From assembly GCA_964247055.1 (NCBI GenBank), contig OZ176054.1:11346001-11410000 (forward strand): a stretch of 64,000 nt of DNA, given 5' to 3'. Below, piece after piece: positions 11,303 to 64,000 of this stretch. A program made the position numbers and the translations under genes. The notes beneath the pieces were generated by a model, which did no database searches, was not told where the DNA came from, and saw only the letters and a list, made by a program, of their open reading frames with translations. The stretch is from Paragordius varius (taxonomy: Eukaryota > Animalia > Nematomorpha). Position 1 is the first letter of the stretch, and each line of letters begins with the position of its first letter.

Positions 11303-13480
11303 TTGTTTCACTGGAACCCCTATCATTTTTTAAAAAACAATACAAAACCAAAAATTTTTAAGTGTCGCCGCATCCCGATACCGTTAAAAGAAAAAGTCGA
11401 CTCTAAAATTAAGAGACTTTTAGAAGCGGACATAATCAAACCATTAGACCCTACGACTGATAAACTAACCTGGGTCACTCCTATTGTTTGTATAACAAAA
11501 GCGAATGGTGCTTTAAGGTTATGTGCAGATTATCGTATTGCCATAAATCCGCATCTAGTAGATGTCATTAATAATATGCAGACATTTGACGAATTAGTAG
11601 TTTCCAAAATAGGATTAGGAAAATCATTTTCGGTAATCGATTTGAAAGACGCATATCTGCAATTGCCAATAGATCAAGAAAGTCAAAAGTTACTAACAAT
11701 TACCACACCCCTAGGGGATTTTACATATAAAAGGCTTCCCTTTGGCCTAACAAGCGCCCCCTGCATTTTTCAAAGATTAATGGATAAGATTTTAGGTGAC
11801 TGCTTAGGAACAGCTGTATATTTAGACGATATTTTAATAAAAGGAAAAAACCGCAACGAACATAAAAGAAGCTTAGAAAAGGTATTTAAGCGTTTAGACG
11901 AATCTGGTTTAAAATTAAGTAAAAGCAAACTAAATCTTTTCAACCGTCGCAAGCTATTTGGGGTATGTTATTTCAAAAAACGGCATATCAGCCGCCGATA
12001 AAGTTAAAGACATACAAGACTTCCCAAGACCCACTGAAACAACACTCAAGTCCTTCTTGGGATTAATAAATTTTCACACACGATTCCTCCCGAAATTGCA
12101 TGGAAGTTTGGCTATACTTCACGACCTAAGCAGTTATAAAAAACCCTGGATATGGACCAAAAACCACGAGGATTGCTTTAACAGAGCCACAAATTCAATA
12201 TGTCATACTGTTAAACTCCGTTCAACCCTGGGTTACCTATAATAATCAAAACAGACGCCTCGAATAAAGGGTACGGAGCTGTATTACTACAGACCACGCA
12301 GTAGGATATAAATAAACCCATTGCCTACGCATCTAGAAAGTGGTCTAAACCCGAAGAAAATTATTCAGTGATAGAAAAGGAATCACAAGCCATACTTTTC
12401 GCTTTTGAAAAATTTAGAACGGTTTAATACGGGGAAGAAATTTGAACTGCGTACTGATCACAAACCACTAATAAAGATGGTTGGAAAAAATCGTAAACTA
12501 GACCAAATTAATAATTCCAATCTACTACGTTGGATATATAAAGCTAGCGAATTTAATTACAATCTACGGTACATTAAAAGCCACGAAAACATTGCAGATC
12601 CATTGTCCCGCATGCCGACAGAACCACAACAACAAGACACAGAAAGCCTTTAAACAGCAGAAAATGTAAGATTTGTCAATAGTTATCTATTCAATATAAA
12701 TCGTGACCATATTAGAAGCCAGACCGAAACCGACCCTGTATTAGAACAGGTAATAAGAGCACTAAGAACAAACAACTCGTCCAATAAAATATTATATCCA
12801 TTCACAGTTTTAGAAATGAAATTGAAAATACATACGGGCTATTATATTGGCATGATAGATTAATAATTCCCGAATCTCAAAAAATAAATACACAATTATT
12901 ACACTTCGGATCCAAAGCAATGTACGAACAAGCAAAACAAATAGTCTTTTGGCACAACATGGAAAGCGACATAAAAAAGTGGGTAGATACGTGTAAAAAG
13001 TGTCAAGAAAACCGTCCGATGCGAAAACTGAATCCTACATACAATTGGAACACGAATACAGCATATGGGAGAGATTACATCTAGATATAGCAGCGAACAA
13101 TTATTATTGGATATAACTTATTAACAGTTATTCTCGGTGGGTCGAAGTTAAACTATCGAACATGATATCGACCAAAAATATCTTAAATATCCTAGACGAA
13201 TGTTTCAGTCGATATGGATTTCCAAGAATGATAGTAACCGACAACGCGTCTTACTTTCCATCTGAGGAGTTAAAAAAATTCATGGAAACGGGAAACATTA
13301 AACATGTAACATCAGTTCCCATCATCCAAAAACGAACGGAATGGTGGAACGAGTAATATATACCCTAAAAACACATTATCGGTCAGCAGAAGACGGTGAC
13401 CCACAATCAAAAATAAATAACAGGCTTTGGGGATACCGCAACTAACATACACAGTGCTACAAATACATGTCCCGCTCTGC
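11303..13480 (+). pseudogene. pol: pol: reverse transcriptase, RNase H, integrase (several frameshifts)
   Basis: LRLCADYR, IDLKDAYLQ, RLPFGL, YLDD, DAS...GAVLLQ, LRTDHKPL, IADPLSR and IVTDNASYF motifs spread over shifted ORFs. Confidence 0.9.
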
Positions 13481-31139: not shown

Positions 31140-34100
31140 TAATAGAAGTAAAGTTATATTACACAGAAAACATTTATTAAATACCATAATCAAACATGTG
31201 TCTACGACAGTAGGATCTAACTTAACATCACCCTTTCCCTGTCCTTGATACTATGTGGTGGGTGTCGGATTCGTGTAGAGTATCGCCGTTCTGTATGAGT
31301 GTCAGTGGTAGGTGTTATAGTGGGTGTTTGTTGGGATGGCAACTCAATGATGGGTTCCGAGGGTTGAGGCGGAGGTAAGGTCGGGGCTTCGGTCGTGGCA
31401 GTAGGGTACCTAACATATAGGTCATGCGATGGTGTATTTTCTTCGGGCGAAATTGTCTTTCCCATTATTCTTTTACCTCCTTCCCTTGATCTCAGCTGAT
31501 CGGCGTGTTTTCGGATGATTTTTTATCATCTCGTATTTCATATGAGAGTAATCCGAGTCGTTTATTTACAATTCCTTCTCGCCAACCATTCGCTAGTTCA
31601 TTTTTTATATATACTTTTTCGTTTTCATGGATTCGTGATTCGGTTGTACATCGTCTAAGAAGTCTATTTGTTGATATTGTAGCCATGTGATTGGATTGGG
31701 TAGGGTACATTTTAGGAAAAGTTGAGCGGGACATGTATATGTAGCACTGTTTATGTTATTGCGGTATGCCCAAAGCGTGTCATTTATTTTTGATTGTAGG
31801 TCACCGTCTTCTGCTGACTGATAATGTATTTTGAGGGCATATATCACTCGTTCCACCATTCCGTTCGTTGTTGGATGATAGGGAACTGATGTTACCTTAA
31901 TGTTTCCTGTTTCCATGAATTTTATAAGCTCCTCAGATGTAAAGTAAGACGCGTTGTCGGTTACTATCATTCTTGGATATCGACTGAAACATTCGTCTAA
32001 GAAATTTAAGATATTTTTGGTCGATTTTATGTTCGATAGTTTAACTTCGACCCATCGAGAATAACTGTCAATAAGAACTATCCAATAATAATTGTCTATC
32101 AGGCCTGCTATATCTAGGATCTCTCCCATATTGCTGTGTTAGTTCCAATTGTATGTGGGACAGTTTTCGCATCGGACGGTTTTCTTGACACTTTTTCACG
32201 TATCTACACTTTTTTATGTCGCTTTCAATGTTGTGCCAAAAGACTATTTGTTTTGCTTGTTCGTACATTGCTTTGGACCCGGGGTGTCCGACGTGCAATA
32301 GTAAGATATTTATTTTTTGAGATTCGGGAATTACTAATCTATCATGCCAATATAATAACCCGTATGTATTTTCAATTTCAATTCTAAGACTGTGTGGATG
32401 TAAAATTTTATTGGACCAGTTGTTTGTTTTTAGTGTAGTAATACCTGTTTTAATACGGGGTCGGTTTCGGTCTGGGTTCTAATATGGTCACGATTTCTAT
32501 TGAATAGATTACTATTGACAAATCTTACATGTTCTGCTGTTTGAAGGCTTTCTGTGCCTTGTTGTTGTGGTTCTGTCGGCATGCGGGACAATGGATCTGC
32601 AATGTTTTCGTGGCTTCTAATGTACCGTCGATTGTAAAATTAAATTCGCTAGCTTTATATATACAACGTAGTAGCTTGGGATTATTTATTTGGTCTAGTT
32701 TAAGATTATTTCCAAAAAGCTTTATTAGTGGTTTGTGATCAGTAGGCAGTTCAAATTTCTTCCTTGTAATAAACGTTCTAAATTTTTCAAAAGCGAAAGG
32801 TATGGCTTGTGATTCTTCTATTACTGAATAATTTTCTTCAGGTTTGGACCACTTTCTAGATGCGTAGGCAATGGGTTTATTTATGCCCTTCTGAGTGGTC
32901 TGTAGTAACACTGATCCGTACCCTTTATTCGAGGCGTCTATTTCGATTATTATAGGTAACCAAGGGTTGAACGGAGTTAGTTTAACAGTATGGCACATTA
33001 AATTTTAGGCTCTGTTAAAACAGTCCTCGTGGTTTTTGGTCCATATCCAGGGTTTTTACAACTGCTTAGGTCGTGAAGTATAGCCAAACTTCCATGCAAT
33101 TTCGGGAGGAATCGTGTGTGAAAATTTAAGCCTAAGAAGGACTTGAGTGTTGTTTTGTCAACAGGGTCTTGAGAAGTCTTGTATGGCTTTAACTTTATCA
33201 GCGGCTGGTCTACCGTTTTTTGATATAACATATCCCAAATAGCTTACAGAAGGTTGAAAAAGTTTTAGTTTGCTTTTACTTTCCTTGCGGTTTTTTCCTG
33301 TTATTAAATTATCCTCTAAATATACAGCTGTTCCTGGGCAGTCACCTAAAATCTTATCCATTAATCTTTGAAAAATGCAGGGGCGCTTGTTAGGCCAAAG
33401 GGAAGCCTTTTATATGTATACCCCACGGGTGTGGTGAATGTTAGTAACTTTTGACCTTGACCTATTGGCAATTGCTGATATGCGTCTTTCAAATCGATTA
33501 CCGAAAATGATTCTCCTAATCCTATTTTGGAAACTAATTCGTCAAATGTCGGTATATTATGACTGTCATTTACTAATGTGGATTTATTGCAACACGATAA
33601 TTTGCACATAACCATAAAATACCATTCGCTTTTGTTATACAAACAATAGGGGTGGCCCAGGTTAGTTTCTCAGTCGTAGGGTCTAATAGTTTGATTATGT
33701 CCGTTTCTAAAAGTCTCTTAATTTCAGAGTCGACATTTTCTTTTAACGGTATCGGGATGTGACACTTAAAAATTTTTGGTTTTGATTGTTTTTTAAAAAA
33801 AGTTTGATAGGGGTAGGGAACCCTAACTTTTCATAAAAAAATGAATTAAATTTATTAACAAGTGAATTTTCCTTAAATATATTATTATTAAATTTACAAC
33901 AATTTATCAACTATTTTATGGCATTCGGTAATTCTTGTAGCAAATCCCAACTAAGAATTGCCGGGGCTTTCTTGCCGCTTACAACCATACACGCCAAAGA
34001 TTTTGTTTCACCATCGCATTGTACCGTGACCATACAACTACCCTTGGAATTGATTCTTTGTCCATCATAGCTATACGAATCTGGGCCTGTTTGTTGCAAC

Positions 34101-35028
34101 TCGGGCTCCCCAATTTTTTCCCACGCTTGACCATCAATTATAGATACGCTTGAAACTGTGTCTATAATCATGCGTATTGGCTTGCCATTTATTATTTTTG
34201 TTATCTTGGGGGTGGATCCAGATTCGACATGCTGAACGTTGCTAATCCTTTTCTTCTTAGAGCACGATTGGAAGTGATTCGAGCCTTGGCACTTATAACA
34301 TTGTTTGCCCCAAGCTGGGCATCTGCCGGGTGCATGACCTAACCCGCAGAATCGACACTTGTTTTGGTATTTCCGAGCTGTAGTCTGCAATATCTGATCT
34401 ATTGTTGTTAGTTGGTGTGCTTTTTCATAGTTGATGGCAATGTTTACCACTTTTAGGGTTACGGTTTCGTTTCCCCACATGGCATCGGGGAATCTAGTAA
34501 ACAGATCTAGTTCTATTTTTTCCACTCCCATTGCAATGAACTCGCGAATTTTTTCATCGATGTCAAGCTTGAGTTGCATTTTGAGGCTCGGTTTTGACTC
34601 GTAAAAGGAATTCCGTAAATGTTTTATTTTTTTTCCGACGATGTTTTACGAAATATAATCTGGCCTGGAATATATTTGTCCTATTCGATACGTAAATTTT
34701 CCTGCCGGCTTCAATGATGTCCGGCCAGGAAGTATTATCAAGCGAATTTGGGAAAGGAATTGTTCGAATTTCTTTGTGACTTACATTGCTGCATAAGTGA
34801 GAAATAACGTGCAATTGTTGTCGTTTGCCGTCATGTTTTTTGCAGCTAGCATACGCTGAATGTATAAAACGTATCGCTCAAAATTTTCCTTTTCATCAAA
34901 CCTTTCCAGAGAAATTTTTGCCAGGTTAATTGACGCGCCAATATAGAAGTAAAGTTATACTACACAGAAAACATTTATTAAATACCAAAATCAAACATGT
35001 GTCTACAACAGTAGGATCTAACTTAACA
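31140..35028 (-). mobile_element. Ty3/Gypsy copy 2 (same family as copy 1) with short 87-88 bp LTRs, decayed
   Basis: LTRs at 34942-35028 and 31140-31227; TSD GCATC/GCAAC (1 mismatch); gag-PR-RT-RH-IN ORF fragments highly similar to copy 1. Confidence 0.92.
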
Positions 35029-39300: not shown

Positions 39301-42265
39301 CAGTATACCGACATGGTTTAATAAGTGGGATGGGAGAATCAATGTATTTGTTATCAACATGTCCAAAATATTGATCAGCCAAATCAACTAATTTCCCATG
39401 ATCAATTCCTTAATTAAGCAAATAAAAAAATAGATTTACATTGTTGCTTATTTCGCACTAAAGTTGGGCGATTTGCAACATAGTGTATATGGAAAAAAAC
39501 AACAAAATATTGAATAATATAAACAAAGTAATGTATAGGAAAGAAAATATTGTTCTTTCAACATTTTGTTGTTTTTTTCCATACGCTACTGGGTTCCAAA
39601 TTTCCAAACTATAAAGTGAAAAAAGCAACCATCATAATGCATAATGTATGAATTATGTATTTATTGATTATGTATTCACAATTTTTAATAACGTAGGTGT
39701 CAAATTTTATATCATTAAAATAAAGGTTGGTTATAAATTAGTTTTTATTCTTTTTAAAGTCCCAACCTATATGGAATCTTATCAATAATAAAAATTTTTG
39801 TATAGATCTTTTATAACAAATCTCATTACCCTTGTATAAATTTAAAACGTGAAAATGCTAAAAATATTTTTTCTTTTTAACAGACAGCAACCCATTTTGC
39901 AGTTAAATTTTTTTGACTAATTTTTCCTTAAATTATTCATATTGTGGTGTAAATATATTGTGGTGTAAATTTGAAGAATGAAATAATAAAAGCAATAATA
40001 GATTCAGTATTTTAAGTATATTTATTTAAAATAAAATTTTAAACAGAAAAAAATGTAAAAAATTAATTATAATTTTAACAAAAAAATATTAATGTGCAAT
40101 ACCTCCGGCGGCAGCTATAACCATGCGTGTCGATTTATAATGATCCTTGATATAATTGATTAAATGATTTCGATTGATAGTTCTATATATATATATATAT
40201 ATATTTAAATAAATAAAAATATCTTATAAATATAAATAAGGTCTATCAAAAAAAAGATTAAATAAATTATTTTTAACCAATATTATGCAAAATTGCAAAA
40301 TATAAGATAAAAATTTTCTATGCAAACTTCTTTAAATATAAGTACAATTGATATGATTAAATTTTTTCACATCTATTTATGTTTAAAACTACATTGTTTT
40401 AAATAAAAAAAACCTAAACATTTTATTCACTTAAAAAATATAAACCCAAATATATATCTAAACTCATCATTTTCAAAATAATAAATAAAAATTCCCAGAT
40501 TATACAATATAATTGAACTCAAAAAATTTTTAATAGAAAACAAATCAAACTTAATATTTTCAGTGGGTCCCAAAATAGTACGGCCCAGCGGAGTTCCTTG
40601 ATACGCACATGAATGCAAATGATCGAAAATGACTTCTTGTAAATTTGTTTCTACTTCCTATTTTAAAGTTAAAGTAAAAATTGAAATTATAAAGACTAAA
40701 CTACAAACTAAAAGGAAAATTTTTTTATTACAAGAACAGGCCTACTTTTAAAACGACGATTTATATAACCTTTCTTTATGGGGCTTAAAAGGACCGAAAT
40801 ATAATTTGCTAAAATAAAACTATATTATTAAAAAATATTATTACAGGTTAAAAATAGATGTATATATGATAGTTTTTATTTTTAGTTTTTGTGTGTATAA
40901 TTTCGTTTTTACCTGTAATTTTTATTTTTACTGTACATGCTAAAAAATATTTGTTTCCGACTTTTTTGAGATGTCCCATTTTTTATCTTTTTAAAACAAT
41001 CACGCGAAAAAAGGCTAAATTTATTATTTTAAATTATATAAAAAATTTTAAACTCACAAATTTATATATTTTACTTGCATTTCCCTCAAAATAACTCCGC
41101 GTTCTCTTTCTATTTCGGCTAACCCAAATTTGCTGTTTAGCAATATATCCGACAGAATATCCATTGCTATAAATAAATTAAATATCGTACATTTAGGTGA
41201 AAAGCCCTATCTTAACAAATTTAACAAAATACGGTAAATTTGAGATATGAAATGGTAAAATTAGTAAATTCTTGAGTTTTTAGAGATTTTAAAGTAAAAA
41301 TTATCAATCGTTTATCAACAACCATATATTTTAATACTATATTTATAAAGATAATAAGTTCAAAATTAATTATTCCCTTATCTAAACCGTCTGCCTAATC
41401 AAAAAAACTATTTAAAGAATAAATTATTTTAAAATATAATTAACTTTATTTCTATAATTTTTTTAACTTGTAAATCCCTATTCAACCAAACAGGCTCTTT
41501 CAGAATTTACTGTATAGTATATGCATACCTTTGGGTAAATCTTTAGTTAGACATTTGGCATAATACACTGTTTGTTCTCGTGAAGTATAAGCATTCAAAT
41601 GAGCTCCCATATTTTCGATTTCGAGTTCAAGGTCAAGTTGAGACCTTTTACTGGTTCCCTATATTTAAATTTAAAATAACATTCTTACATGAGTATATTT
41701 TAGTAAAAATAAATAAAACAGGTGGATTTATTAATTGTTTAAATATAAAAATTTAATTTAAGGTAATAAAAACGAAACGGCTTTTACAAATCAAATTTTT
41801 TAAGCATGGTTTTATATATATTTATTTATAAACAAATCACAAATCTTTTCCTAAATTTATCAAATTTAAAAAAAAACTAATAAGTTCAAATATAAAAATT
41901 AAGAGACAATATTAAAATATAAAAGTTATTATCCCATATAAAAACTAACTTTAAACGCCATGTGTTCTAGGAAATGCGCAGTACCGTTATTTTCTTCGGT
42001 TTCATATCGACTTCCAGCATCTATCCATACACCAACCTAAAATATATATAATTAAATATACTGTGCAAGTTTGTAGTCCAGAATCTTCTGAAGCGATTTG
42101 CATACCATTTTTTAGCGTAGATATTCGTGTTTCTGGCAAATTATATATCGTTTGTTCATATTTGACCGGTTGTGTTACCAGCGATCTTTTAAGCTATAAT
42201 AAAATAAAATAGGAATAAACCAAAAATTGAGTAGGTTTAGTTAGGATCTTTAACATTTTTTCCAT
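36369..42265 (-). CDS. PMPCB: Mitochondrial processing peptidase beta subunit, 14 exons, 470 aa
   Basis: Exons 42221-42265, 42062-42193, 41950-42036, 41529-41658, 41075-41166, 40551-40657, 40103-40182, 39293-39408, 38795-38899, 38301-38503, 37725-37841, 37176-37233, 36729-36804 and 36369-36433 splice in frame (1413 nt). M16 motif HFLEH intact, plus [12 protein letters not shown] and [13 protein letters not shown]; basic N-terminal presequence. Confidence 0.95.
39480..39590. repeat. Short hairpin / mini-MITE in a PMPCB intron
   Basis: atggaaaaaaacaacaaaatattgaa pairs with ttcaacattttgttgtttttttccat. Confidence 0.7.
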
Positions 42266-51530: not shown

Positions 51531-54389
51531 ATGGACGATGATATTCCATTATCCGAATTCCGAACAAAATGGGATCGACTTTTTAATCTTTACATATACC
51601 CAATTTTGGCTGTTAAAGGCTTATTTGTAAATGCTTTTGCCATATACGTTCTTTGGCACGTAACATCACCAACCACACCACAGAACAATAATTATAAAAA
51701 AGAACCGATGGAAGCGGCTAAATCAAAAAAATTCCGTATTGATCAAAAATATAACTTGGCATATTATGCTAACAAGGGACGTTATGCTCACTCCCCATTG
51801 TTGAAAGAATCAAAATTATCTAATTGTGATTCTTTGCGGAAAAACAGCAAAAAAATTACGAAATCAACATCGGCAATTAGTAATGCATTTACAAACAAAG
51901 TTTCAAACTCCTCTAATATTCCAACATACACTATCCTTAAGCAAATAGCCGTAACTGATTTTTGTGTCTGCTTCTTTATGTTGCTAAATTCCATTTATCA
52001 ATTTCACAAATATTTGTCACCAAAACGGACAACGGGATTCATTCCTACTTGCACACCCAGGGAAAGTCAATTATCTTACGTGGCTAATTGGTTCATTTCT
52101 AAGATAGTATTTTTTGCCATAAATTATTTTTTGAAAGTTAATGTTTGGTTAGTGGTAATTCTTGCCTTAGATCGATATGCTATGTTAAAACACACAATGT
52201 GGTATTATGCCAATACGAAGATGGGCCGACAAAAACATTGTTCCCTCCATCACAAAAGTATACTTGTGGTTTATGCCACGATTTTTATTTACATGTCACC
52301 CTTGATGAAGAAATATCAAATTGTACCGATAAATTCTCATTTATTAAAGAATGCAAATGATGGAAACAGTGCTCACATCAAAATAATCACATTGATTATC
52401 CTGCACCTTACATTACATTATCAAATCATAGTAGCGCTAACTTAAATCATGCTAGTCTCAACCTTAAAAATGCCCGATTAACTGGACAATGCATGGCATT
52501 TTGCTTGAAACCAACATCGGTTCATTTTCATAACTATGAAATTAGCAAAGCTGTACTGATGACATTTGTCCCCCTAATAATTTTGATTTATTTAAAATTT
52601 TGTATTATTCGCAGTTACAAGGGTGCTCAAGAGTTTTCGGCCACCACCAGGTATTATGTTATAAAAAAACGATTTTCTGTTGTTTAAATTAAAAAGCGTA
52701 AAAATAATATCATTAGACCATAAGTCGCCAACACAAATGGCTTTGCGGGTCGTTTCGGTTTGAAAAACCGACGGACCCCATTCGAAAAATATGTATAATT
52801 ATTTTATTCGATTTTCAACATAAATTGTACTTTTTGTTTAATTAATTTTTGCTGGTTTCGCCAAAATTTGAAAAAATGTATTCAGTTTAACATTGCTTAA
52901 GGGTACCAATTTTATCCAGGTATAAATCGCATATTTTTGCAAATTATGAAATTTCGTAATATTTGGTATTTTTTCAAATTTTTTGTGGACCACACAAAAT
53001 ATTGGGGCACCGCGTGAACAACCCTTGTACTGGTACTTTATGGAATATTGGAACTATATTTCATAATAATTAATGCATTTGTTTTTCCGGAGAAATTTAG
53101 CGCCAAAACAGTTTTGATAAAAACATTCATGAAATCTAAATAAAATTAATTGTATTAAAGTAAAGAGCTTTTAAATGTATCATTTGATTAATACCTTATT
53201 AATTAAAAATTTTATATTTTAGATATGCCCAAAGTGTAATTTTATAAAACAAATTATACAGTCAAATCTTTTTTACGTCTTTTTGTGTAAATCTTTTTGA
53301 CTTTTTGGCGATAAAAATCACACTAACTAAGTTTAAAACTCATATTTTTTTATTATTTATGCTCAAATTGTTATATATATTGACCTTAAAAAATAACTGT
53401 AGAAATTGGTTAATAGAACCAAAATCCTTTTCGATTGTATATAATAAATTCGATGTTCAGCCTCCACTTATATGAAAATTATATATAACTTAAATAATAC
53501 TGATGAAAAAATAAAAATATCATATATATACCAATAGAGAAAACCATTAAGCGAATTTTTTGAACACAAAAAGTTTTTATTCTAACAAATAGAAAACATA
53601 TGTTGTAAAACTTTTTTTCTTGCGATCCCACGTCAAAAAGGTTTGACTGTATATTTTCATAAATAAAATCTACAAACCCTAAAATGTATAGTAGAAAATC
53701 ACACATATTTCCATGAGTTAAATGCAAAAAAATTAATATTTTATTTTGGATATAATATCATCTCATTACCGATGAATCAATATAAGGATATATAAAAAAT
53801 GAAACCTATCTATACCTTATGTTGTTTTAAGAGTGACATCACGCTGAATACTAGGAAAATTTGAGGAATGTAATTCAATTAAAATTGTTTTGAAATTCAT
53901 CTGAATTATTTTTCATTAATGCACTGCTAAAGTAACTGACATTTGGCTATTTCTAAATATTAAAATGGGTTTACCTTAAGAAAATTTATAATTACCATTA
54001 TTGCCTATTACTTTACTTTAAGTTTTTTTTTATAAAATAGAATATCTGGAGATAAAAATCTATGCAAGCACAATAGTTTAACATCAATCACAAGTCTGTC
54101 CAGTGCAAATTTCGGCAAAAGTACCAATATTAAGAAATCGAATAGTAAAATTGAAAAATCCTTAACTCTCATAACTTTGGGCTTTTTAGTTATGCTCATG
54201 ATAACCCTGATTCCAGCCGCTATTTCTATTATTCTCAATGCGATTGGGGGGAAACAATGGCGAATGACTTACTATAAATACAATCTCATCAGTAATGCCC
54301 TAGAGCTTTCAAACTGTGTTTTTAATTTTTACATTTACATTGGACGGAGTAGTGCATTAATGAAACGATTTCGAAGTCAAATAAATTGA
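51531..54389 (+). CDS. Class A (rhodopsin-like) GPCR, FMRFamide/peptide-receptor-like; reading frame break near 52320-52385
   Basis: TM1 YIYPILAVKGLFVN, TM2 LKQIAVTDF, TM3 LALDRY, TM5 FVPLIILIYL, TM6 ITLGFLVMLMITLIP, TM7 SNCVFNFYIY. Phase-2 intron at 52651-54040. Start codon uncertain. Confidence 0.8.
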
Positions 54390-54419
54390 TATGTTACCAA
54401 TGATATTTATTTTTATATA

Positions 54420-54631
54420 TACCATTTACAATTCAAATTCACCAAAATAAATTATGAATTTTCGGGCTAATATAACTCATTATTAATATGAAATATATCT
54501 TTATGGCATAGATTATTATTATTTCAGTATTATTATAATATTAGTTCAAATTTCATTTTTTTAAAAATATAGGTAATTTTTACTCTTAAAAAACACATTA
54601 TTTTTTAGGTGAATTTGAATTGTAAATGGTA
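54420..54631. mobile_element. MITE (TACCATTTACA family)
   Basis: taccatttacaattcaaattcacc ... ggtgaatttgaattgtaaatggta. Confidence 0.8.
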
Positions 54632-54964
54632 TTTTTGATCATATTAATGGAAATGAATTTATGAAGGATAAAAAATACAAAAGATGTACATATATTTAAG
54701 AGTTTTGGTATTCGAAAATAATGCAATGATTACGTTTTAATGTAATATGAGGCGTTTGGAAGTGTGCACAATACGGTATAGTTATTCTTTAAATATTTTT
54801 AACACCTTTTTTCACAAAATTTTACCGAATCAACAACCTTCATTTTTAATATCACTAACCTGCTTCCGGCTCTACATATTTTCTGCTTGGTGTCAAGCCC
54901 TAAAAAGTCAATGTATTAAATTGTTTATCAATTACCCATTCTAACATGCTTTGACATATAATAT

Positions 54965-56587: not shown

Positions 56588-59284
56588 ATGCACATAAAAA
56601 TTGCAAAGAAGCACTTGAACTTTAAGAAATGTCGATTAACTCGGTTTTTTCCAATATTACGATGGAGTCGAGCCTACAATCTCGAATATTTGCTATATGA
56701 CGCAGTGGCGGGTCTAACTGTGGGCATGACAGTCATTCCTCAAGGAATTGCATATGCTAAAGTCGCTGGTTTGCCCATTGAGGTATATGTTTACTTTTTT
56801 CAAAATACAGTGTGAGTAAATATACCTTGCTAGTTTTTCATTAATTTATTGAGAGATAGCATATACAACAAAAAGCTTTATTGAATAAAATAACAAAAAA
56901 AGCCAATAATATTTCATGATGCTGCATTTGCTATCTGGCGATTTATGGAAAGCTAAGAATATATATACTCATACTGTATATATTTATACATTGCTGTTTA
57001 CTTTTTTTGAGATACAGTATGAACTCATAGAAAGTTATTAATTATTGTCTACTAGTAAATACAACAAAGGGCAGTATTATAGGCTAATAATAGTAAAAAG
57101 TGAAAACAACAACTATAAGCCAATAATACTGCCCTTTATTGTATTTACTATTTGGCAATAATTAATAACTTTCTAGCAAAGTATACTTACACATACTGTA
57201 AAAGATAGTAAGAGTGTATAAACCTGTTTATAATTGTAAAATATACAATTCTTATTATTAGTCCATATATTTTTCCACTTCTTTTTTCGTTCTTATTTCA
57301 TTCTTTTTTATTACACTATATTTATATAAAGTAACGATATTTTAATTGGTTTTACGGGTCTATTAAATTGTAAATAGGAAAAAAACGTTAAGTGAGGATC
57401 CATATAGCATTATATAGGGCTCTTTACTGTAGCACCAAAAAATAAGCAGCTATTTGGTATACTAGGGCTTTAATGAGCATTGAATTAGTAATTTCGAAAA
57501 ATATGAGTCGGATGAAGTGCCTTAAATGGGCAATATGAATTAGCCGAGTATCGCTAAATTGCCCATGGAAAACAAAATATGGTTTATATAAGATTTAATC
57601 CTAGTTTATAAGTCATAAGATTATGAAAAGCCATAAAACATTTGGGCCACTTAAGTTAACTTATTTACTGAAATGCCCAGATCAAGGCTCGTTCAGATGG
57701 CTTCAAATGCATTATGGCTCAAGGTTGAGAAGACGAAATATTAAGCCTTCTTTTTAGACGCTTTTAAATTTAACCATATAAATTTAAAAAGAGGGGCGTT
57801 TTTTCGGCTTATTCACATGGCTCATTGGGCTAATTGAGTTTGCTCAACGGCATACTAACTCTTGTTTTTTTAGACTAGTATCGGTTTATTTATTAAAGGG
57901 AAGAATGTTACGTCTGTAAGGATAAATAAGTTATTATTGCAGCCTAAATTAAACTTTTAATCAATGTATATTTTTTCATTCTTATCCCTATGATCTAATC
58001 TGAATATTTTTAGATAAAATGCACAATATTTCCTTTTATGTATAATCTAATTTTATTATATTATATTTGAACATCCCCATGAAGTAGCAACTAATTTTCC
58101 ACAACTATATTCAAAGGATCTGTACATACTTTATGTCTAAAATAGAGAATATATTTAGGCACACTTAATATTTTTCTCTCTTTTCAATTAGTACGGATTG
58201 TATTCGTCATTTATGGGAGCTTTTATCTATACGTTTCTCGGGACTTCGAAAGATGTCACGTATGGTCCGACAGCAGTCATGTCACTCATGACTTATCGCT
58301 TTGTGAGCGTAGCCGTGGCTAAAACCATGAATACCGTTTTTGCTTCCAATGAACTCAAAAATGAAATAGTATTTTTTATGATATAGAGGTTAAAATTGGG
58401 CTAATAATACTTAAATATCAAAAACATATAATATATATATATTAAGAGCGATATTTTGAATTTATAGCTTATATTTAAAAAAACCATAATTTTCATAAAA
58501 AATAAAGTTTATGATTTTATTCGCGTAACTATATACCCTCTAAATTTTTTCCAAAAAATAAAATCCCTCATCTATAATTTACCCATCATCGTAGACGTTA
58601 AAGGAAGATGTGGAAAAGTCTATGTGGATACATTATAGTTTAATTTTAACCTTGATTGCTGGAATCATACAAGCTTTAATGGGGTTTCTCCGTTTAGGTT
58701 GTAAAAGCTTTAAATTTATACCTATATATTTTTATTTTACAGTAAAAATTGAAATTATGCGGACTAAATAAAAATCAAGAGACAATTTTTTACCAAAAAA
58801 CAACCATCCTAATTTATAATTCATTGTTCAAACTGCTAAGTATGAATGAAATAGAAATGTTAATTAGTATACAATCTATTACATATTTTACAATTGTAAT
58901 AAAATAGTTTATTAACAAAAAAATTCAGGTTTAAAAAAGAATTCCATGTCTTTTTTAAAAAGATATTTGACTTAATCTTTTAAAATTTGTCTGTATGAAT
59001 TGCATTTTTAATATTATTTTGTTTTTGTATAAAAAAAATTTGGATGTTTCAATAGGTTTCCTAACCAGTTTCATATCTCATCCAGTTCTACATGGATTTA
59101 CTAATGGAGCAGCTATAATCATTGGTGTCAGCCAAATAAAAGTAATCATGAGTGTAAAATTAAAATATTAGGACTTATTAGGGATAAAAGTTCCGAAATC
59201 AAATTTTATCCAACAAACTTACTATGTCTTCCGACATATAAAACAAGCCAAGTAATTATATTTATTGATAAAAAAATTTCAAAT

Positions 59285-59327
<43 letters not shown>

Positions 59328-62300
59328 TTTTTATGGGCAGAAAATGGGATTGTATCATTGGAATATCTAGTCTTGTACTGTTGTTAATATTAAAGGTATG
59401 CATATTTTTTATTGTCATAAATTCAAATAATAATATATATTTTAAAAATTTGTGATTTAATAAAAATTATTGAATTGCCTTAAACCATATCTAAGATAAG
59501 AGTGTTTAAGATACATATGGCTAAATTATACTGTTGGAGATGTTTTTGTTTGTATATAATTGTGATTGGTTCGAAGTTCTGGTAAAAGATAAAATACTAT
59601 AAATAAGTTCGAATAAAGTTTGTAAAGTAACAAATTATCCAGTACAAAATTGAAAATTATTAATTGTAAAAAAGCACTAAAAATGCGTTTTTTATATAAT
59701 ACAGTATAGTACAGTAAAATAGATAAAAAACGAATCTATTTTTTCTTTAAACCTCATAAATGGATTAATACCCTATTATTTGCTATTTTATTATATAGCG
59801 ATGCATTACTTTGCCATGTGTGACTAAAAAAATTGTTAACAATCCTATAAGAAAGTCCTTAAAAAGAACAGCGGCTCTAGAAAACGGAATACAAACGAAA
59901 TCTGAAACAACTCAGATTCTGGATCCCCTTGTTAAAAATGTGGCAGAATACGAAACTAATCAATCTCAGGATATGAATAGAAATAAATGGTGGTCGATAA
60001 TTTTAATATTTATGACCGCTTTTCAAAAAATTGTCTGGCTTGCCTTAACAAGTATTTAGTTGTGGTGTTATTATAAAATAACTCGAAATAGAGTTTTTTC
60101 AAACTGGAAACGGTTTTGATTTTCTGAAGACGCAAATTTATTATTTATATAGAGAAAACCGGTTATGGTCCCTAATAATATTGTGGATTTTAAGCTCGAA
60201 AAAGGAAATTTTAACACTTTTTAGAAAATCAAATAGTTTTTACAATAACCAGTCTTGGTATGGACCCTAAGGCTCTTTAACAGTTGTCATTCTTAAGCCA
60301 AATATTTTGTTTTTATAATATAATTAATATGATTATGTTTTGTATCATATTTTGTTTCATCATCACTGTCAGCCCTGGAAAGGCTAGGTTTAAGCTTCAA
60401 GAGTCCAGTTTCCTATCCTTTGAAAAAAATAAACAATATACCCTTATAATTAATCATCATAAATCTATAAATATTATCTATGTGTATATAGGCCGAAACG
60501 CTCTTATAATTGCAATATCTGGCTTATCGGCATATTTGTTAAGTTCACATTTATCCTTACCACCTAATGCTATAACACTGACTTCTGCAGTCACAAATCC
60601 CAACCCAATTTTTGCTATACCAAACTTCCATTTTCAATATAAATTAACAAATGTTGGTAGCAATAATAATAATTTATCAAACAGTCAACCAAAGGACAAA
60701 GATATATATTTATCATTTATGGATGTTTTTAAGGTAAAACTTGACTATAATTGTATTATAGGACATTGGTTTTGGTTTCGTTTCGATTGCCATCATAAGT
60801 ATCCTTGAAACATTGGCCATTGCTAAAGCTTTTGGTAAATAATGTTAATTTTTTCTAATTAGCCACACCTCTACTCACTTTTACAACGAAATAGCCAGGA
60901 AATATAAGTATACGATTGATTCAACACAAGAATTCATTGCCTTAGGTTAGATACTTTTTCAATAATTTGTTTGTGTGTTTTATTTTCATTTTGGCTCGCA
61001 TATTCAAATGGTCGTAATTGACAAATTATAAACTAAACTATTCAACGAATGTCTCATCGTTTATTGACCAGTTATATATTAAAATCAAGGTATTTATAAA
61101 AAAAATTAATTAATCATTATCAAATATATTATTACAATAAAATCTTAACATTCATATCTTATTCCGTAAAAAAAACTTATATATCAAAATAAAACCAAAA
61201 ATATCTTTTTTATTTTTTCATTTTTTTGTCATCTGGTTTATGAGTATATAAAAAATTTACTGTTTTATTTTGATATCTTACATGAGTGGTAATTATATAC
61301 TATATAATTTATGCAAAATAGGATTTAAAGGTAGTGGAATATCAACTAATCTTACAAATCGCTGTATTTAACACAAATTAATGTTTTTACTCAAATATAT
61401 ACGGATTTTTGGTTGATTTTCCACTACTTGTCAATTTTATTTTGTATTAATTTATATACTTTATGATTCCCGCCCATGTGAAATTCCAAAATAAAAGAGT
61501 AAATTTTATATACCTTCATAAACCAGATCAATAAAATAAAAAACAATAATTTTTAGTTTTAATCTGATATATGAGTTTTTTTTACTGAATAATATATAAA
61601 TATTAAGATTTTAATAAAGAGTTTAGCTAATAAATAATTAAAAAAAATTATTTAAATATAGTTTCATAAAAATTTTTTTGTCTTTTAAGTGTGTTAAAGG
61701 AAAAAAGCCATCTTTTAACTGAGATTTTATAGAAACCCTAATTATATAATTTTAGGCTATTTATATATTGGAAATATCTCCAAAAATGATTATACCATAA
61801 TATCTCAACTTTATCATTATTTTTTAATTATCCATAATTATCCTTAATTTTCACTTTTTGCCCGATTTCGATTTTCTATCAATATTTCAAAAACGAGGTC
61901 TAAACAAATAAAATTTTTACGACAAATGAATACGCTGATCTTAAGCTATCTCACGAAAAAAATTATTTTGTTAATTTTTTTTGCCATTCATCAATAATTT
62001 ATTAAATTCAAACATAAGACTGTAAAATGCAAGCACAATATATAAATGTGGTAAAAATTAAAATTATACGGACAAAAAAAATGAAAAGAATATTTTTTTA
62101 TTATAGATAACTTTACTTTTGATTTTTCAAATATAACTTCTTTTCTCAGTTTCAAAATAGGGCATAGAAATGTAAATTGTTAATGCACTTAATTATGTCA
62201 TTTAAAATTGTGATCAAATAGTTAAATGTAAAAAAAATTAAGATTTAAAAAAGTATGGGTTGTCTTTTAAAAAATATATTTGTCTTTATATTTTCACGTA

Positions 62301-63953
62301 TTAATTTTTTACTGTAATTGGTAATCATAATATAATATAATATAATACAAATTTTAACTATCATTTGTTAAAAACTTTATTATGGATATATAACAATTAT
62401 ACGAACAAAACTTGGAAATATAAAGACAAATATTTTTTTCTTAAAGACAACCAAACTTTTTTAATCTTGATTTTTTTAATATTACTCATTGTTTTAAAAT
62501 ACAAAGTATAATATAGAAATGTAAATTGGTAACACATCAATTATGTATTTTAGAATTGTAATTAAATGTTTTTTATAGGATAAATTAAGGTTTAAAAGTA
62601 TGGTTGTCTTTAGAAAAAAAATTTGTCTTATATTTTTACGTTTTGTCCGTATAATTTCAATTTTTACTGTATAATGGAAAAATAATATCTTAAAATATTA
62701 ATAAAATCTTTTTGTAATTATTTTAGGGGTGGCGAATATTGCGAGCTCTTTTGTTGGTTCTTACCCAATGGCGGGAAGTTTTTCTCGGTAACATTTATTA
62801 TTACTTTCGTAATTTAATTTTTTATGAAAAAAATTTTTTGTATTTAAAGATCCGCATTGAATGCCCAAACTGGCGTTAAAACTCCCGCTGGCGGAATATT
62901 TACAGGTAAATTTATATATCTTTTCCTAATTGTAATTTAAATTTCTAAAAATCATTTATAAAAATATAGGGTTGTTAGTCATATTAGCCATGCGTTTTCT
63001 TACAGCCTATTTCAGGTTACCAACTTATGATAATACTTTATTCTATAGTTTTATTTTAATTATAAAATTAAGCTTTGGTAATTTTTTTGGAAGTATATTT
63101 AAGTATATTTTCAATTTTCCGGTAAAATATTTTCCTAAAATTAATAAATATATAAGGATATAGATGATAATTTTTTTTGAAACCAAAAATTTCATATAAT
63201 ATAATTTAGGGTATTTTATGAATGAAGTCGCTTAAGGATATTAGCAACTATATTTTGGAAGGAACCTTTTTTTATTATTTAACCAAAAATATAATATATA
63301 AAATAAATTTAAAATGGTGGTGTCTTTAGTTAATTTTTACAAGAATTTTCGTAGCAAGTTTTATATGGTATATATAAAGGATTTATACATATTCAATTTT
63401 TCTTTTTAATTTATCCATTCCATAGATTTATTCCGATTCCTAGTTTAGCGGCTCTCATCATTACCGCTATAATTAACCTGATTGACTTTAAAACATTTTA
63501 TCATATCTACCTCATCAAAAGTATGTCGAAAATAACTCTTATTTTTCGGTTACTTGAATTATATATGGTTAAAATTAAACGATTTATTAATTGCTTGCTA
63601 TACCATTTACAGTTCAAATTCACCCTTGTAAATAAATATTTTTACGAAGTTTATTTTTTTAGCAATATTTCAATTTTAAACAAATTTTTTTAAAAAAATC
63701 TATTAATATATAGGTAATTTTTAAATTTATAAAAAACACATAATTTATTTAAGGGTTAATTTGAAAAGTTCCAAGGGTGAATTTGAATTGTAAATGGTAT
63801 AATATAATATGTATAGAAACTGATTTCACGGTTGCTTTTATAACATTCATCACATGCTTTATTTGGGGGATTGAAATGGCTTTGGTGCTTGGCATAGCTC
63901 TTTCTTTAGCCTTCCTAATCTACCCAATATCTAAACCAAGGTTAAATATGGAG
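56588..63953 (+). CDS. SLC26A11: SLC26/SulP anion transporter, SLC26A11-like; at least 15 exons, continues beyond the window
   Basis: Exons 56588-56782, 58192-58302, 58595-58697, 59056-59141, 59172-59251, 59341-59395, 59799-60051, 60492-60733, 60762-60834, 60895-60945, 62727-62787, 62850-62905, 62970-63015, 63426-63520 and 63817-63953 stay in frame. Motifs DAVAGLTVGMTVIPQGIAYA, GPTAVMSL, DSTQEFIALG, GSFSRSALN. Exact orthology is inferred. Confidence 0.88.
57027..57176. repeat. About 150-bp near-perfect hairpin (MITE-like) in SLC26 intron 1
   Basis: gaaagttattaattattgtc..tagtaaatacaacaaagggcagtatta pairs with taatactgccctttattgtatttacta..ggcaataattaataactttc. Confidence 0.8.
59286..59324. repeat. 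(TA)n microsatellite
   Basis: Slightly interrupted TA run. Confidence 0.9.
63601..63799. mobile_element. MITE (TACCATTTACA family) flanked by TA
   Basis: ta|taccatttacagttcaaattcacccttg ... caagggtgaatttgaattgtaaatggta|ta. Confidence 0.85.
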
Positions 63954-64000
63954 GTAATATGTTATATAGATATTTATTAGAATAACCTTATAAAAATAGA

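What the first reader, a model, noticed from the sequence alone, without database searches (positions are those of the whole stretch)
59142..60761. 30- and 28-nt introns in the SLC26 gene confirm the tiny-intron class in a third locus
Seen: gtaatcatgagtgtaaaattaaaatattag (30 nt, 59142-59171, in-frame TAG) splits SQIK|DLLG, and gtaaaacttgactataattgtattatag (28 nt, 60734-60761, frameshifting) splits MDVFK|DIGFGF. Both joins restore continuous SLC26A11-like sequence (compare QIKNLLG and MVQDMGAG in the human protein, from memory). The same gene has 1409- and 1781-nt introns.
Basis: partly seen in the sequence, partly recalled or inferred. Interest (0 to 1): 0.75.

Follow-up and report, generated by a model that had tools for sequence, protein, structure and literature searches.

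The report
Two tiny introns in SLC26A11-like gene
A sulfate-transporter gene of a very AT-rich, horsehair-worm-like animal can only be read if segments of 30 and 28 bases are cut out as introns, adding to evidence that this animal has a class of introns about as short as any known in animals, next to kilobase-long ones.

Summary
Observation confirmed; interpretation supported by sequence evidence, but no RNA data were available.

- **The two segments.** 59142-59171 (30 nt, GTAATC..TATTAG, in-frame TAG) and 60734-60761 (28 nt, GTAAAA..TTATAG, frameshifting) sit in an SLC26A11-like gene. The gene has at least 15 exons and starts at 56588.
- **Junction 1.** 100 of 116 homologue alignments place a 10-codon gap exactly on 59142-59171.
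- **Junction 2.** The closest relative is Gordionus XP_065321453.1. Its residue 353 ends at 60733 and residue 354 starts at 60762. In 58 orthologues from other phyla, only offset 0 aligns.
- **Paralogues.** An old paralogue (C8) has a 244-nt GT..AG intron at junction 1 and an acceptor at the same place as junction 2. A third paralogue (C6) reads straight through junction 1.
- **Gene state.** The gene is under purifying selection. Both segments are unique in the genome.
- **The class is general.** I found 26-, 27- and 28-nt introns in the CCT4 and CCT3 genes, with exact residue contiguity to solved structures.

The mechanism is most likely ordinary U2-type splicing. Introns under 30 bp are published for myxobolids and Dicyema only, so this is a new member of a known kind. 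The scan has already flagged this class many times on other DNA of this genome.

The parts
56588..64000 (+). SLC26A11-like (SulP family) gene, 15 exons inside the window. It continues about 2.6 kb past the window end, where the STAS region lies.
   Evidence: PF00916 matches exon by exon at profile positions 2-30, 32-66, 78-103 and 105-132. Colinear tblastn of Gordionus P0001 residues 10-702. Exon and intron table.
59056..59141 (+). Exon 4, (G)FLTSFISHPVLHGFTNGAAIIIGVSQIK
   Evidence: PF00916 positions 105-132, E 7e-7. PDB 9iar_B (SLC26A11) residues 144-171.
59142..59171 (+). Tiny intron, 30 nt, GTAATC..TATTAG, phase 0. Its terminal TAG is an in-frame stop.
   Evidence: 100 of 116 homologue HSPs put a 10-codon gap exactly here (alignments). 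A Pfam read-through match covers profile positions 103-167 across it. Unique in the genome.
59172..59251 (+). Exon 5, DLLGIKVPKSNFIQQTYYVFRHIKQA(K)
   Evidence: Aligns to P0001 NILGIKVAKSHFLLETIHTFRDI directly after ..GQIK and to paralogue C8 NILGIKTKKSTF.
60492..60733 (+). Exon 8, (S)RNALIIAISGLSAY...KDIYLSFMDVFK
   Evidence: P0001 residues 272-353 end exactly at 60733. The last 12 residues align at offset 0 in 58 orthologues.
60734..60761 (+). Tiny intron, 28 nt, GTAAAA..TTATAG, phase 0, frameshifting if retained. It contains TATAAT, a candidate branch site with its A at -12.
   Evidence: P0001 residue 353 at 60733 and residue 354 at 60762. The downstream frame is closed by the TAG at 60759-60761. 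Unique in the genome.
60762..60834 (+). Exon 9, DIGFGFVSIAIISILETLAIAKAF(G)
   Evidence: PDB 9iar_B residues 305-328, the only hit. 83% identical to paralogue C8.
56783..58191 (+). Intron 1, 1409 nt. It holds a 67-nt-arm hairpin element at 57028-57175.
   Evidence: Pfam profile 30 then 32 across it. Inverted repeat I3.
60946..62726 (+). Intron 10, 1781 nt, filled with nested palindromic elements at 61138-61613 and 62232-62477.
   Evidence: P0001 residue 395 ends at 60947 and the next HSP starts at 62717. Inverted repeats I1, I2 and I4.
60835..60894 (+). Ordinary short intron, 60 nt. The gene's other short introns are 62, 64 and 89 nt.
   Evidence: 20-codon gap in homologue alignments. Table.

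Best explanation
Both segments are genuine U2-type (GT-AG) spliceosomal introns of an expressed, selected SLC26A11-like anion-transporter gene in a nematomorph-like animal. They are removed from the pre-mRNA by the ordinary spliceosome working across the intron. They use the same GTAA/GTAT donor and TAG acceptor as the gene's 60-1781-nt introns. A branch adenosine is probably squeezed about 9-12 nt upstream of the acceptor (TATAAT in the 28-mer, TTAAAA in the 30-mer), with essentially no polypyrimidine tract. Both sit at old intron positions shared with a paralogue, so they are most likely ancestral introns that shrank. If either were retained, a premature stop would follow. Shown here: sequence, frame, colinearity, shared positions, selection, and generality of the class. 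Inferred: actual excision in RNA, the branch site, and the direction of size change.
For: - **Frame.** The 30-mer ends in an in-frame TAG. The 28-mer shifts the frame into a stop.
- **Junction 1 colinearity.** 100 of 116 SLC26A11-type HSPs gap exactly at 59142-59171. The other 16 place a gap of 9-10 codons within one to six codons of it. Pfam reads profile positions 103-167 across it.
- **Junction 2 colinearity.** Gordionus P0001 residues 353|354 map to 60733|60762. In the offset test on 58 orthologues from other phyla, the mean BLOSUM62 score is +2.9 at offset 0 and -7 to -22 at all other offsets.
- **Paralogues.** C8 has a 244-nt GT..AG intron at GQIG|NILG and a cag|DIGFGF acceptor at the same phase-0 sites. 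C6 reads SSQLQPLFGL without interruption.
- **Selection.** Against C8, pN/pS is 0.27 with pS 0.78. One exon is 17/17 identical in amino acids with 10 synonymous differences.
- **Splice signals.** They match the gene's other introns.
- **Generality.** The CCT4 gene has a 26-nt intron (PDB 4v81_D residues 47|48). The CCT3 gene has 27- and 28-nt introns (4b2t_G residues 31|32 and 48|49).
Against: - No RNA evidence of any kind was available.
- No annotated protein of this genome was found in the protein library.
- The 30-mer lacks the T(T/A)TAAT motif reported for other tiny introns of this genome.
- An 18-nt (59154-59171) or a 37-nt (60725-60761) alternative would also keep the frame. Both fit homology worse.
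- In paralogue C8 I could not find the exon piece that matches the last ~20 residues before junction 2, so only its acceptor side is shown to be shared.
Confidence: 0.87

Rival explanations
1. The introns are real but the sites differ or use is partial. For example, an 18-nt intron (59154-59171) or a 37-nt intron (60725-60761) is used, or the segments are frequently retained so that they act as a stop-introducing switch.
For: Both alternatives keep the reading frame (sequence). Very short introns splice poorly in microsporidia (cited in PMC13644364). RefSeq models of the Gordionus orthologue include an isoform that keeps an in-frame 25-codon insert at another intron position of this gene.
Against: The 18-nt version leaves four extra residues (VIMS) that no homologue has. 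100 of 116 HSPs gap the full 10 codons. The 37-nt version deletes VFK, which equals a 3-residue offset and scores far worse than offset 0. Its donor GTTTTT is also weaker than GTAAAA.
Confidence: 0.07
2. The gene copy on C5 is a decaying duplicate, and the two segments are small insertions rather than introns.
For: A closer match to the Gordionus protein exists on C8, so C5 could be the redundant copy.
Against: All 15 exons in the window and the STAS exons beyond it are open, with GT-AG borders. pN/pS is 0.27 at saturated synonymous sites. Both 'insertions' begin with GTAA, end with TAG and sit at positions where the paralogue has introns. Chance for this is about 0.002 per segment.
Confidence: 0.04
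3. The segments are artefacts, or are removed at the DNA level. That would mean an assembly error or programmed elimination like ciliate internal eliminated sequences.
For: The size resembles ciliate eliminated sequences. Some nematodes eliminate DNA (general knowledge).
Against: The segments are not bounded by TA repeats. They are unique sequences, not duplications of their flanks. The same pattern recurs in unrelated genes on other contigs. Known nematode elimination removes large blocks.
Confidence: 0.02

Closest known systems
Ultra-short introns of myxobolid myxozoans and Dicyema japonicum (Hadjez et al. 2026, PMC13644364)
   Same: They are animal GT-AG introns of 30 nt or less. The donor is reduced to a GTA-type motif. 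There is little or no polypyrimidine tract, with A residues shortly upstream of the AG. They sit at conserved intron positions between conserved exons.
   Different: In those groups tiny introns are the norm (median 22-27 bp) in compact parasite genomes. Here only 2 of 14 introns in the gene are tiny, and they sit beside introns of 60-1781 nt loaded with palindromic elements. The lineage also differs, since the nearest relative is the nematomorph Gordionus. That paper does not mention nematomorphs.
Flatworm microintrons (Opisthorchis felineus and other Platyhelminthes, PMC6530080)
   Same: They form a discrete very short intron class that coexists with kilobase introns in the same genes, with canonical sites and loss of the polypyrimidine tract. 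In CCT3 the tiny introns are adjacent and at the 5' end (27, 28 and 36 nt), as described for flatworms.
   Different: The flatworm peak is about 37 bp, whereas here it is 26-30 nt (21-30 nt according to earlier scan notes). In the SLC26 gene the two tiny introns are neither adjacent nor 5'-proximal. The phylum is different.
Ciliate tiny introns (Paramecium ~25 nt, Stentor 15-16 nt)
   Same: The length range is similar, the sequence is AT-rich, the ends are canonical GT-AG, and the branch A lies close to the 3' end.
   Different: In ciliates all introns are tiny. The genetic code and genome organisation differ, and TAG is a stop codon here.
SLC26A11 / sodium-independent sulfate anion transporter (Pfam PF00916 + STAS; PDB 9iar)
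   Same: The host gene matches PF00916 and 9iar_B. Its best named relatives are annotated SLC26A11-like.
   Different: Identity is only about 35% to orthologues from other phyla. A long low-complexity loop lies before junction 2. There are three SLC26 genes in this genome.

Membership tests
U2-type GT-AG spliceosomal intron | GT at the 5' end and AG at the 3' end | tested here: met
   GTAATC..TATTAG and GTAAAA..TTATAG. The other introns of the gene use the same GTAA/GTAT donor and TAG acceptor.
U2-type GT-AG spliceosomal intron | Removal restores the reading frame and colinearity with homologues | tested here: met
   Junction 1 has an exact 10-codon gap in 100 of 116 HSPs. Junction 2 maps to P0001 residues 353|354 and aligns at offset 0 in 58 orthologues.
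U2-type GT-AG spliceosomal intron | Position shared with an intron in a homologous gene | tested here: met
   Paralogue C8 has a 244-nt intron at junction 1 and an acceptor at the same site as junction 2.
U2-type GT-AG spliceosomal intron | Branch-point adenosine in a yUnAy-like context upstream of the AG | tested here: inconclusive
   Candidates are TATAAT (A at -12) or TTGAC in the 28-mer, and TTAAAA (A at -9/-10) in the 30-mer. In DNA that is 75% A+T such motifs are frequent by chance.
U2-type GT-AG spliceosomal intron | Excised from RNA | not testable with these tools
   No transcript data were available and no own-genome protein model is in the library.
Animal ultra-short intron class (Myxobolidae / Dicyemida type) | Length about 30 nt or less | tested here: met
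   28 and 30 nt here. Also 26, 27 and 28 nt in CCT4 and CCT3.
Animal ultra-short intron class (Myxobolidae / Dicyemida type) | Tiny introns are the dominant intron type (median 22-27 bp) | tested here: not met
   2 of 14 introns in this gene are tiny, and none were seen in paralogue C8. One CCT gene has introns of roughly 400-700 nt only. A genome-wide distribution was not computed.
Flatworm-type microintrons | A discrete short class coexisting with long introns, clustered together at the 5' end of genes | tested here: inconclusive
   Coexistence is met. Clustering at the 5' end is met in CCT3 but not in the SLC26 gene, where the tiny introns are numbers 4 and 8.
U12-type (minor) intron | AT-AC ends, or a GTATCCTT donor with a TCCTTAAC branch site | tested here: not met
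   The donors are GTAATC and GTAAAA, and no TCCTTAAC is present.
Ciliate-type internal eliminated sequence | Bounded by TA dinucleotides, in a genome where TAA and TAG encode an amino acid | tested here: not met
   The flanks are AAA|GT..AG|GAC and AAG|GT..AG|GAC. Exons contain no in-frame TAA or TAG.
SLC26/SulP transporter, SLC26A11 subfamily (host gene) | PF00916 transmembrane domain followed by a STAS domain, with best relatives named SLC26A11 | tested here: met
   PF00916 matches. P0001 residues 558-702, the STAS part, align 0.9-2.6 kb past the window end.

The most novel reading that the evidence does not exclude
Horsehair worms (Nematomorpha) would be a third, independent animal lineage with a discrete class of spliceosomal introns of about 21-30 nt. 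Unlike myxozoans and dicyemids, the class is not part of general genome compaction. It coexists, inside single genes, with kilobase introns swollen by palindromic elements. It arose by shrinkage of ancestral introns at conserved positions. That would make this animal a natural system for asking how one spliceosome handles both extremes.
Probability: 0.55. Interest if true: 0.6.

Novelty: new member of a known kind. Interest (0 to 1): 0.45.

Why it matters
**Lower size limit.** Introns of 30 nt or less were long thought absent from animals. They are published for only two parasitic lineages (PMC13644364). A further lineage that mixes 26-30-nt introns with 1.4-1.8-kb introns in one gene bears on the minimum size the animal spliceosome can handle. 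It also bears on whether extreme shortening needs genome-wide compaction.

**Annotation risk.** Gene finders with a minimum intron length of about 40 nt would truncate this transporter, and also CCT3, CCT4 and other genes.

**Limits of this finding.** It is a supporting instance of a class the scan has already flagged in this genome. At 28 and 30 nt it sits at the mild end of that class.

Tried and rejected
- **Short exons searched alone.** Pfam and PDB searches of exon 5 (26 aa) and exon 8 (80 aa) alone gave nothing. I solved this by aligning tool-returned full-length homologues to the genomic DNA.
- **Own-genome protein or transcript.** I looked for one with the Gordionus orthologue as query and found none.
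- **Repeat origin.** An introner or MITE origin of the tiny introns is rejected, because each occurs once in 110 Mb at up to 3 mismatches.
- **Ciliate-type eliminated sequence and U12-type intron.** Both are rejected on end sequences.
- **Earlier scan rule 'A at -8'.** It holds in only 3 of my 5 introns of 26-30 nt. The T(T/A)TAAT motif is also present in 3 of 5, and TAAT in 4 of 5.
- **In-frame stops as a signal.** Stops in the 3n-length short introns (30, 27, 36 and 60 nt) fit surveillance by nonsense-mediated decay. They are not significant at this base composition.
- **Paralogue C8 upstream exon.** The exon piece just upstream of junction 2 in C8 was not found.
- **Joined model.** I never built or searched a joined (spliced) protein model.
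Full report
**Observation**

The window is very AT-rich (about 25% GC). It is G000:C5:11346001-11410000 of a 110.5-Mb, 44-contig assembly.

- 59142-59171 is GTAATCATGAGTGTAAAATTAAAATATTAG (30 nt). Its terminal TAG is in frame with the upstream exon.
- 60734-60761 is GTAAAACTTGACTATAATTGTATTATAG (28 nt). It moves the reading frame by one, and read-through ends in a stop after 24 codons.
- The frame of the downstream exon is closed by the TAG at 60759-60761. It therefore cannot start further upstream.

**Host gene**

I worked exon by exon, by reference.

- Pfam PF00916 (Sulfate_transp) matches consecutive exons at consecutive profile positions: 2-30, 32-66, 78-103 and 105-132.
- The exon ending at 59141 matches PDB 9iar_B (sodium-independent sulfate anion transporter, SLC26A11) residues 144-171.
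- The exon starting at 60762 matches 9iar_B residues 305-328, its only hit.
- My model has 15 exons in the window. Its introns are 1409, 292, 358, 30, 89, 403, 440, 28, 60, 1781, 62, 64, 410 and 296 nt. All are GT..AG (with intron 13 corrected by one base to 63016-63425).
- The gene continues into STAS-coding exons 0.9-2.6 kb beyond the window end.
- The borders of intron 2 (58303-58594) are the least certain. Relatives have a coding loop there.

**Homologues**

A search with exon 1 against 1.84 billion representative proteins returned a 720-aa best hit, P0001. This is XP_065321453.1, 'sodium-independent sulfate anion transporter-like isoform X2 [Gordionus sp. m RMFG-2023]'. Gordionus is a horsehair worm whose genome is 26.9% GC (bioRxiv 10.1101/2023.06.26.546503).

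A word search with P0001 found nothing else closer than 34-38% identity; those hits are brachiopod, hemichordate and mollusc proteins. It found no protein model of this genome. This agrees with an earlier scan note that the genome is 'almost certainly a horsehair worm'. Published nematomorph genomes are 200-300 Mb, so the species remains open.

**Junction 1 (30 nt)**

I aligned 128 tool-returned SLC26A11-type proteins to the genomic DNA with tblastn. Of these, 116 gave an alignment that reads through the in-frame segment.

- 100 of the 116 place a 10-codon gap exactly on 59142-59171.
- The other 16 place a gap of 9-10 codons within one to six codons of it.
- An example is GQIK----------NILGIKV against SQIKVIMSVKLKY*DLLGIKV.
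- The genome-wide Pfam scan likewise runs profile positions 103-167 across the segment, with one TAG inside.

**Junction 2 (28 nt)**

- Gordionus residues 272-353 end at 60733 (..KEVFQ against ..MDVFK). Residue 354 (DISFGF) starts at 60762, with no residue skipped.
- The loop before this junction is too divergent for other orthologues to align. I therefore scored the last 12 residues of the exon against the 12 residues preceding the D[ILM]G.G motif in 58 orthologues from other phyla, at offsets -8 to +8.
- Only offset 0 scores positive: mean BLOSUM62 is +2.9, against -7 to -22 elsewhere. An example is ISFTKMVQ|DMGAGL.
- This also rejects a frame-compatible 37-nt alternative (donor at 60725). 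The same logic rejects an 18-nt alternative at junction 1.

**Paralogues in the same genome**

PF00916 finds three SLC26 genes.

- The close paralogue lies on C8, minus strand. At the same codon boundary (GQIG|NILG) it has a 244-nt GT..AG intron, C8:2735191-2735434.
- The C8 gene also has a ...ttttcag|GAT ATT GGT acceptor directly before DIGFGF, at C8:2730877.
- The distant paralogue on C6 reads ...FSSQLQPLFGLSNL... through junction 1 in a single exon, C6:4392231-4392371.
- Both intron positions therefore predate an old duplication. Over 11 ungapped exon pieces, pS is 0.78 (saturated), pN is 0.21 and pN/pS is 0.27. One exon is 17/17 identical in protein with 10 of 51 synonymous nucleotide differences.
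- The C5 gene is thus a selected gene, not a fresh pseudogene.
- C8 shows no tiny introns, and its introns at shared positions are longer: roughly 395 against 60, 116 against 62 and 165 against 64 nt.
- I could not find the C8 exon piece for the last ~20 residues before junction 2. Only the acceptor side is shown to be shared there.

**Not a repeat, and not special signals**

Each tiny intron occurs once in the 110-Mb genome at up to 3 mismatches. Their donors (GTAATC, GTAAAA) and acceptors (TTAG, ATAG) are those of the gene's other introns. Nothing suggests U12-type splicing or TA-bounded DNA elimination.

**Is the class general?**

I scanned the CCT chaperonin family in the genome and inspected three places.

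- **CCT4-like gene.** It has a 26-nt intron, GTTATTTTATCATTTAATATTTTTAG, at C1:9887362-9887387. The flanking pieces map to yeast CCT4 4v81_D residues 30-47 and 48-77, and to bovine 4b2t_D residue 63 and then 64.
- **CCT3-like gene.** It starts with introns of 27 nt (C2:9804551-9804577), 28 nt (C2:9804629-9804656) and 36 nt (C2:9804720-9804755). The pieces map to 4b2t_G residues 1-31, 32-48 and 49-69.
- **Other CCT genes.** One has a ~70-nt intron, and another has only introns of roughly 400-700 nt.

Tiny introns are thus a recurrent minority class in essential genes. The scan had already noted the same class on other DNA of this genome, and in this window at 42037-42220.

**Mechanism**

The most likely mechanism is ordinary U2-dependent splicing by intron definition.

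- Candidate branch sites are TATAAT (A at -12) in the 28-mer and TTAAAA (A at -9/-10) in the 30-mer.
- Among my five introns of 26-30 nt, TAAT lies in the 3' half of four. The earlier-noted T(T/A)TAAT motif is in three, and an A at -8 is in three.
- At 75% A+T, none of this is strong evidence.
- Retention of either intron gives a premature stop, so errors would probably be removed by nonsense-mediated decay. This is an inference.
- The long introns of the gene carry palindromic or MITE-like elements. This suggests that length here is set largely by insertions into otherwise short introns.

**Comparison with what is known**

- Hadjez et al. 2026 (PMC13644364) show introns under 30 bp as the norm in myxobolid myxozoans and in Dicyema, and in none of the other genomes among the 51 animal genomes they surveyed. 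The paper does not mention nematomorphs.
- Flatworms have a microintron class peaking at about 37 bp beside long introns (PMC6530080). That is the closest architectural analogue.
- I found no paper on nematomorph intron sizes. The main nematomorph genome paper (Cunha et al. 2023) is not in the searchable library.

**Verdict**

It is a new member of a known kind: ultra-short animal introns, in a further lineage and in a mixed architecture. As a single finding it is corroborative rather than new for this scan, and 28 and 30 nt are at the mild end of the class.

Noticed in passing
G000:C2:9804551-9804755 (L027 252-456) and G000:C1:9887362-9887387 (L024 163-188): The CCT3-like gene begins with three consecutive very short introns (27, 28 and 36 nt). 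The CCT4-like gene has a 26-nt intron. All four are GT..AG. The three under 30 nt show exact residue contiguity to solved CCT structures; the 36-nt one rests on Pfam read-through and visual colinearity only.
   Followed up: yes
Paralogue on G000:C8, minus strand: C8:2732530-2732616 and C8:2732225-2732404, downstream of the exon at C8:2732811-2732981: The long intron after the RNAFVIAIS... exon of the C8 SLC26 paralogue contains at least two further diverged copies of that exon's 3' end (SINDRIPEWKMPGLDFNFKSFNGQE...). This is the same 'introns built from copies of exon ends' pattern that earlier scan notes describe for SPT16.
   Followed up: partly
window 54408-54643 and 63585-63800: A MITE-like element with terminal inverted repeats (..CCATTTACAATTCAAATTCACC..) occurs after the upstream gene and again inside intron 14 of the SLC26 gene.
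   Followed up: partly
window 57028-57175, 61138-61613, 62232-62477: The 1409-nt and 1781-nt introns contain long, near-perfect palindromes with arms of 67-102 nt and 75-88% complementarity. Much of their length is therefore inserted hairpin-type elements.
   Followed up: no
Proteins P0001/P0153 versus P0152/P0151 (Gordionus SLC26A11-like isoforms): Two of the four Gordionus models keep a 25-residue insert between ..ASFSR and TAINSQTG... That is exactly the position of the 62-nt intron 62788-62849 in this gene, so it looks like a retained in-frame 75-nt intron in those models. The isoforms also differ by a 3-residue FIS variant.
   Followed up: partly
window 54100-54390 (+): This is the end of an upstream gene whose last exon encodes a seven-transmembrane-receptor-like tail (..NALELSNCVFNFYIYIGRSSALMKRFRSQIN*). 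The window also holds retroelement fragments: RVT_1 at 11303-11998, and protease and integrase pieces at 31608-34579 on the minus strand.
   Followed up: partly
G000:C8:2736143-2736535 (-) versus window 58303-58594: In paralogue C8 and in Gordionus, the stretch between the YGLYSSFMG... exon and the ...GFLRLG exon is a continuous coding low-complexity loop. The C5 gene appears to have a 292-nt intron there instead. This is either intron gain or loss, or a mis-set border in my model.
   Followed up: no
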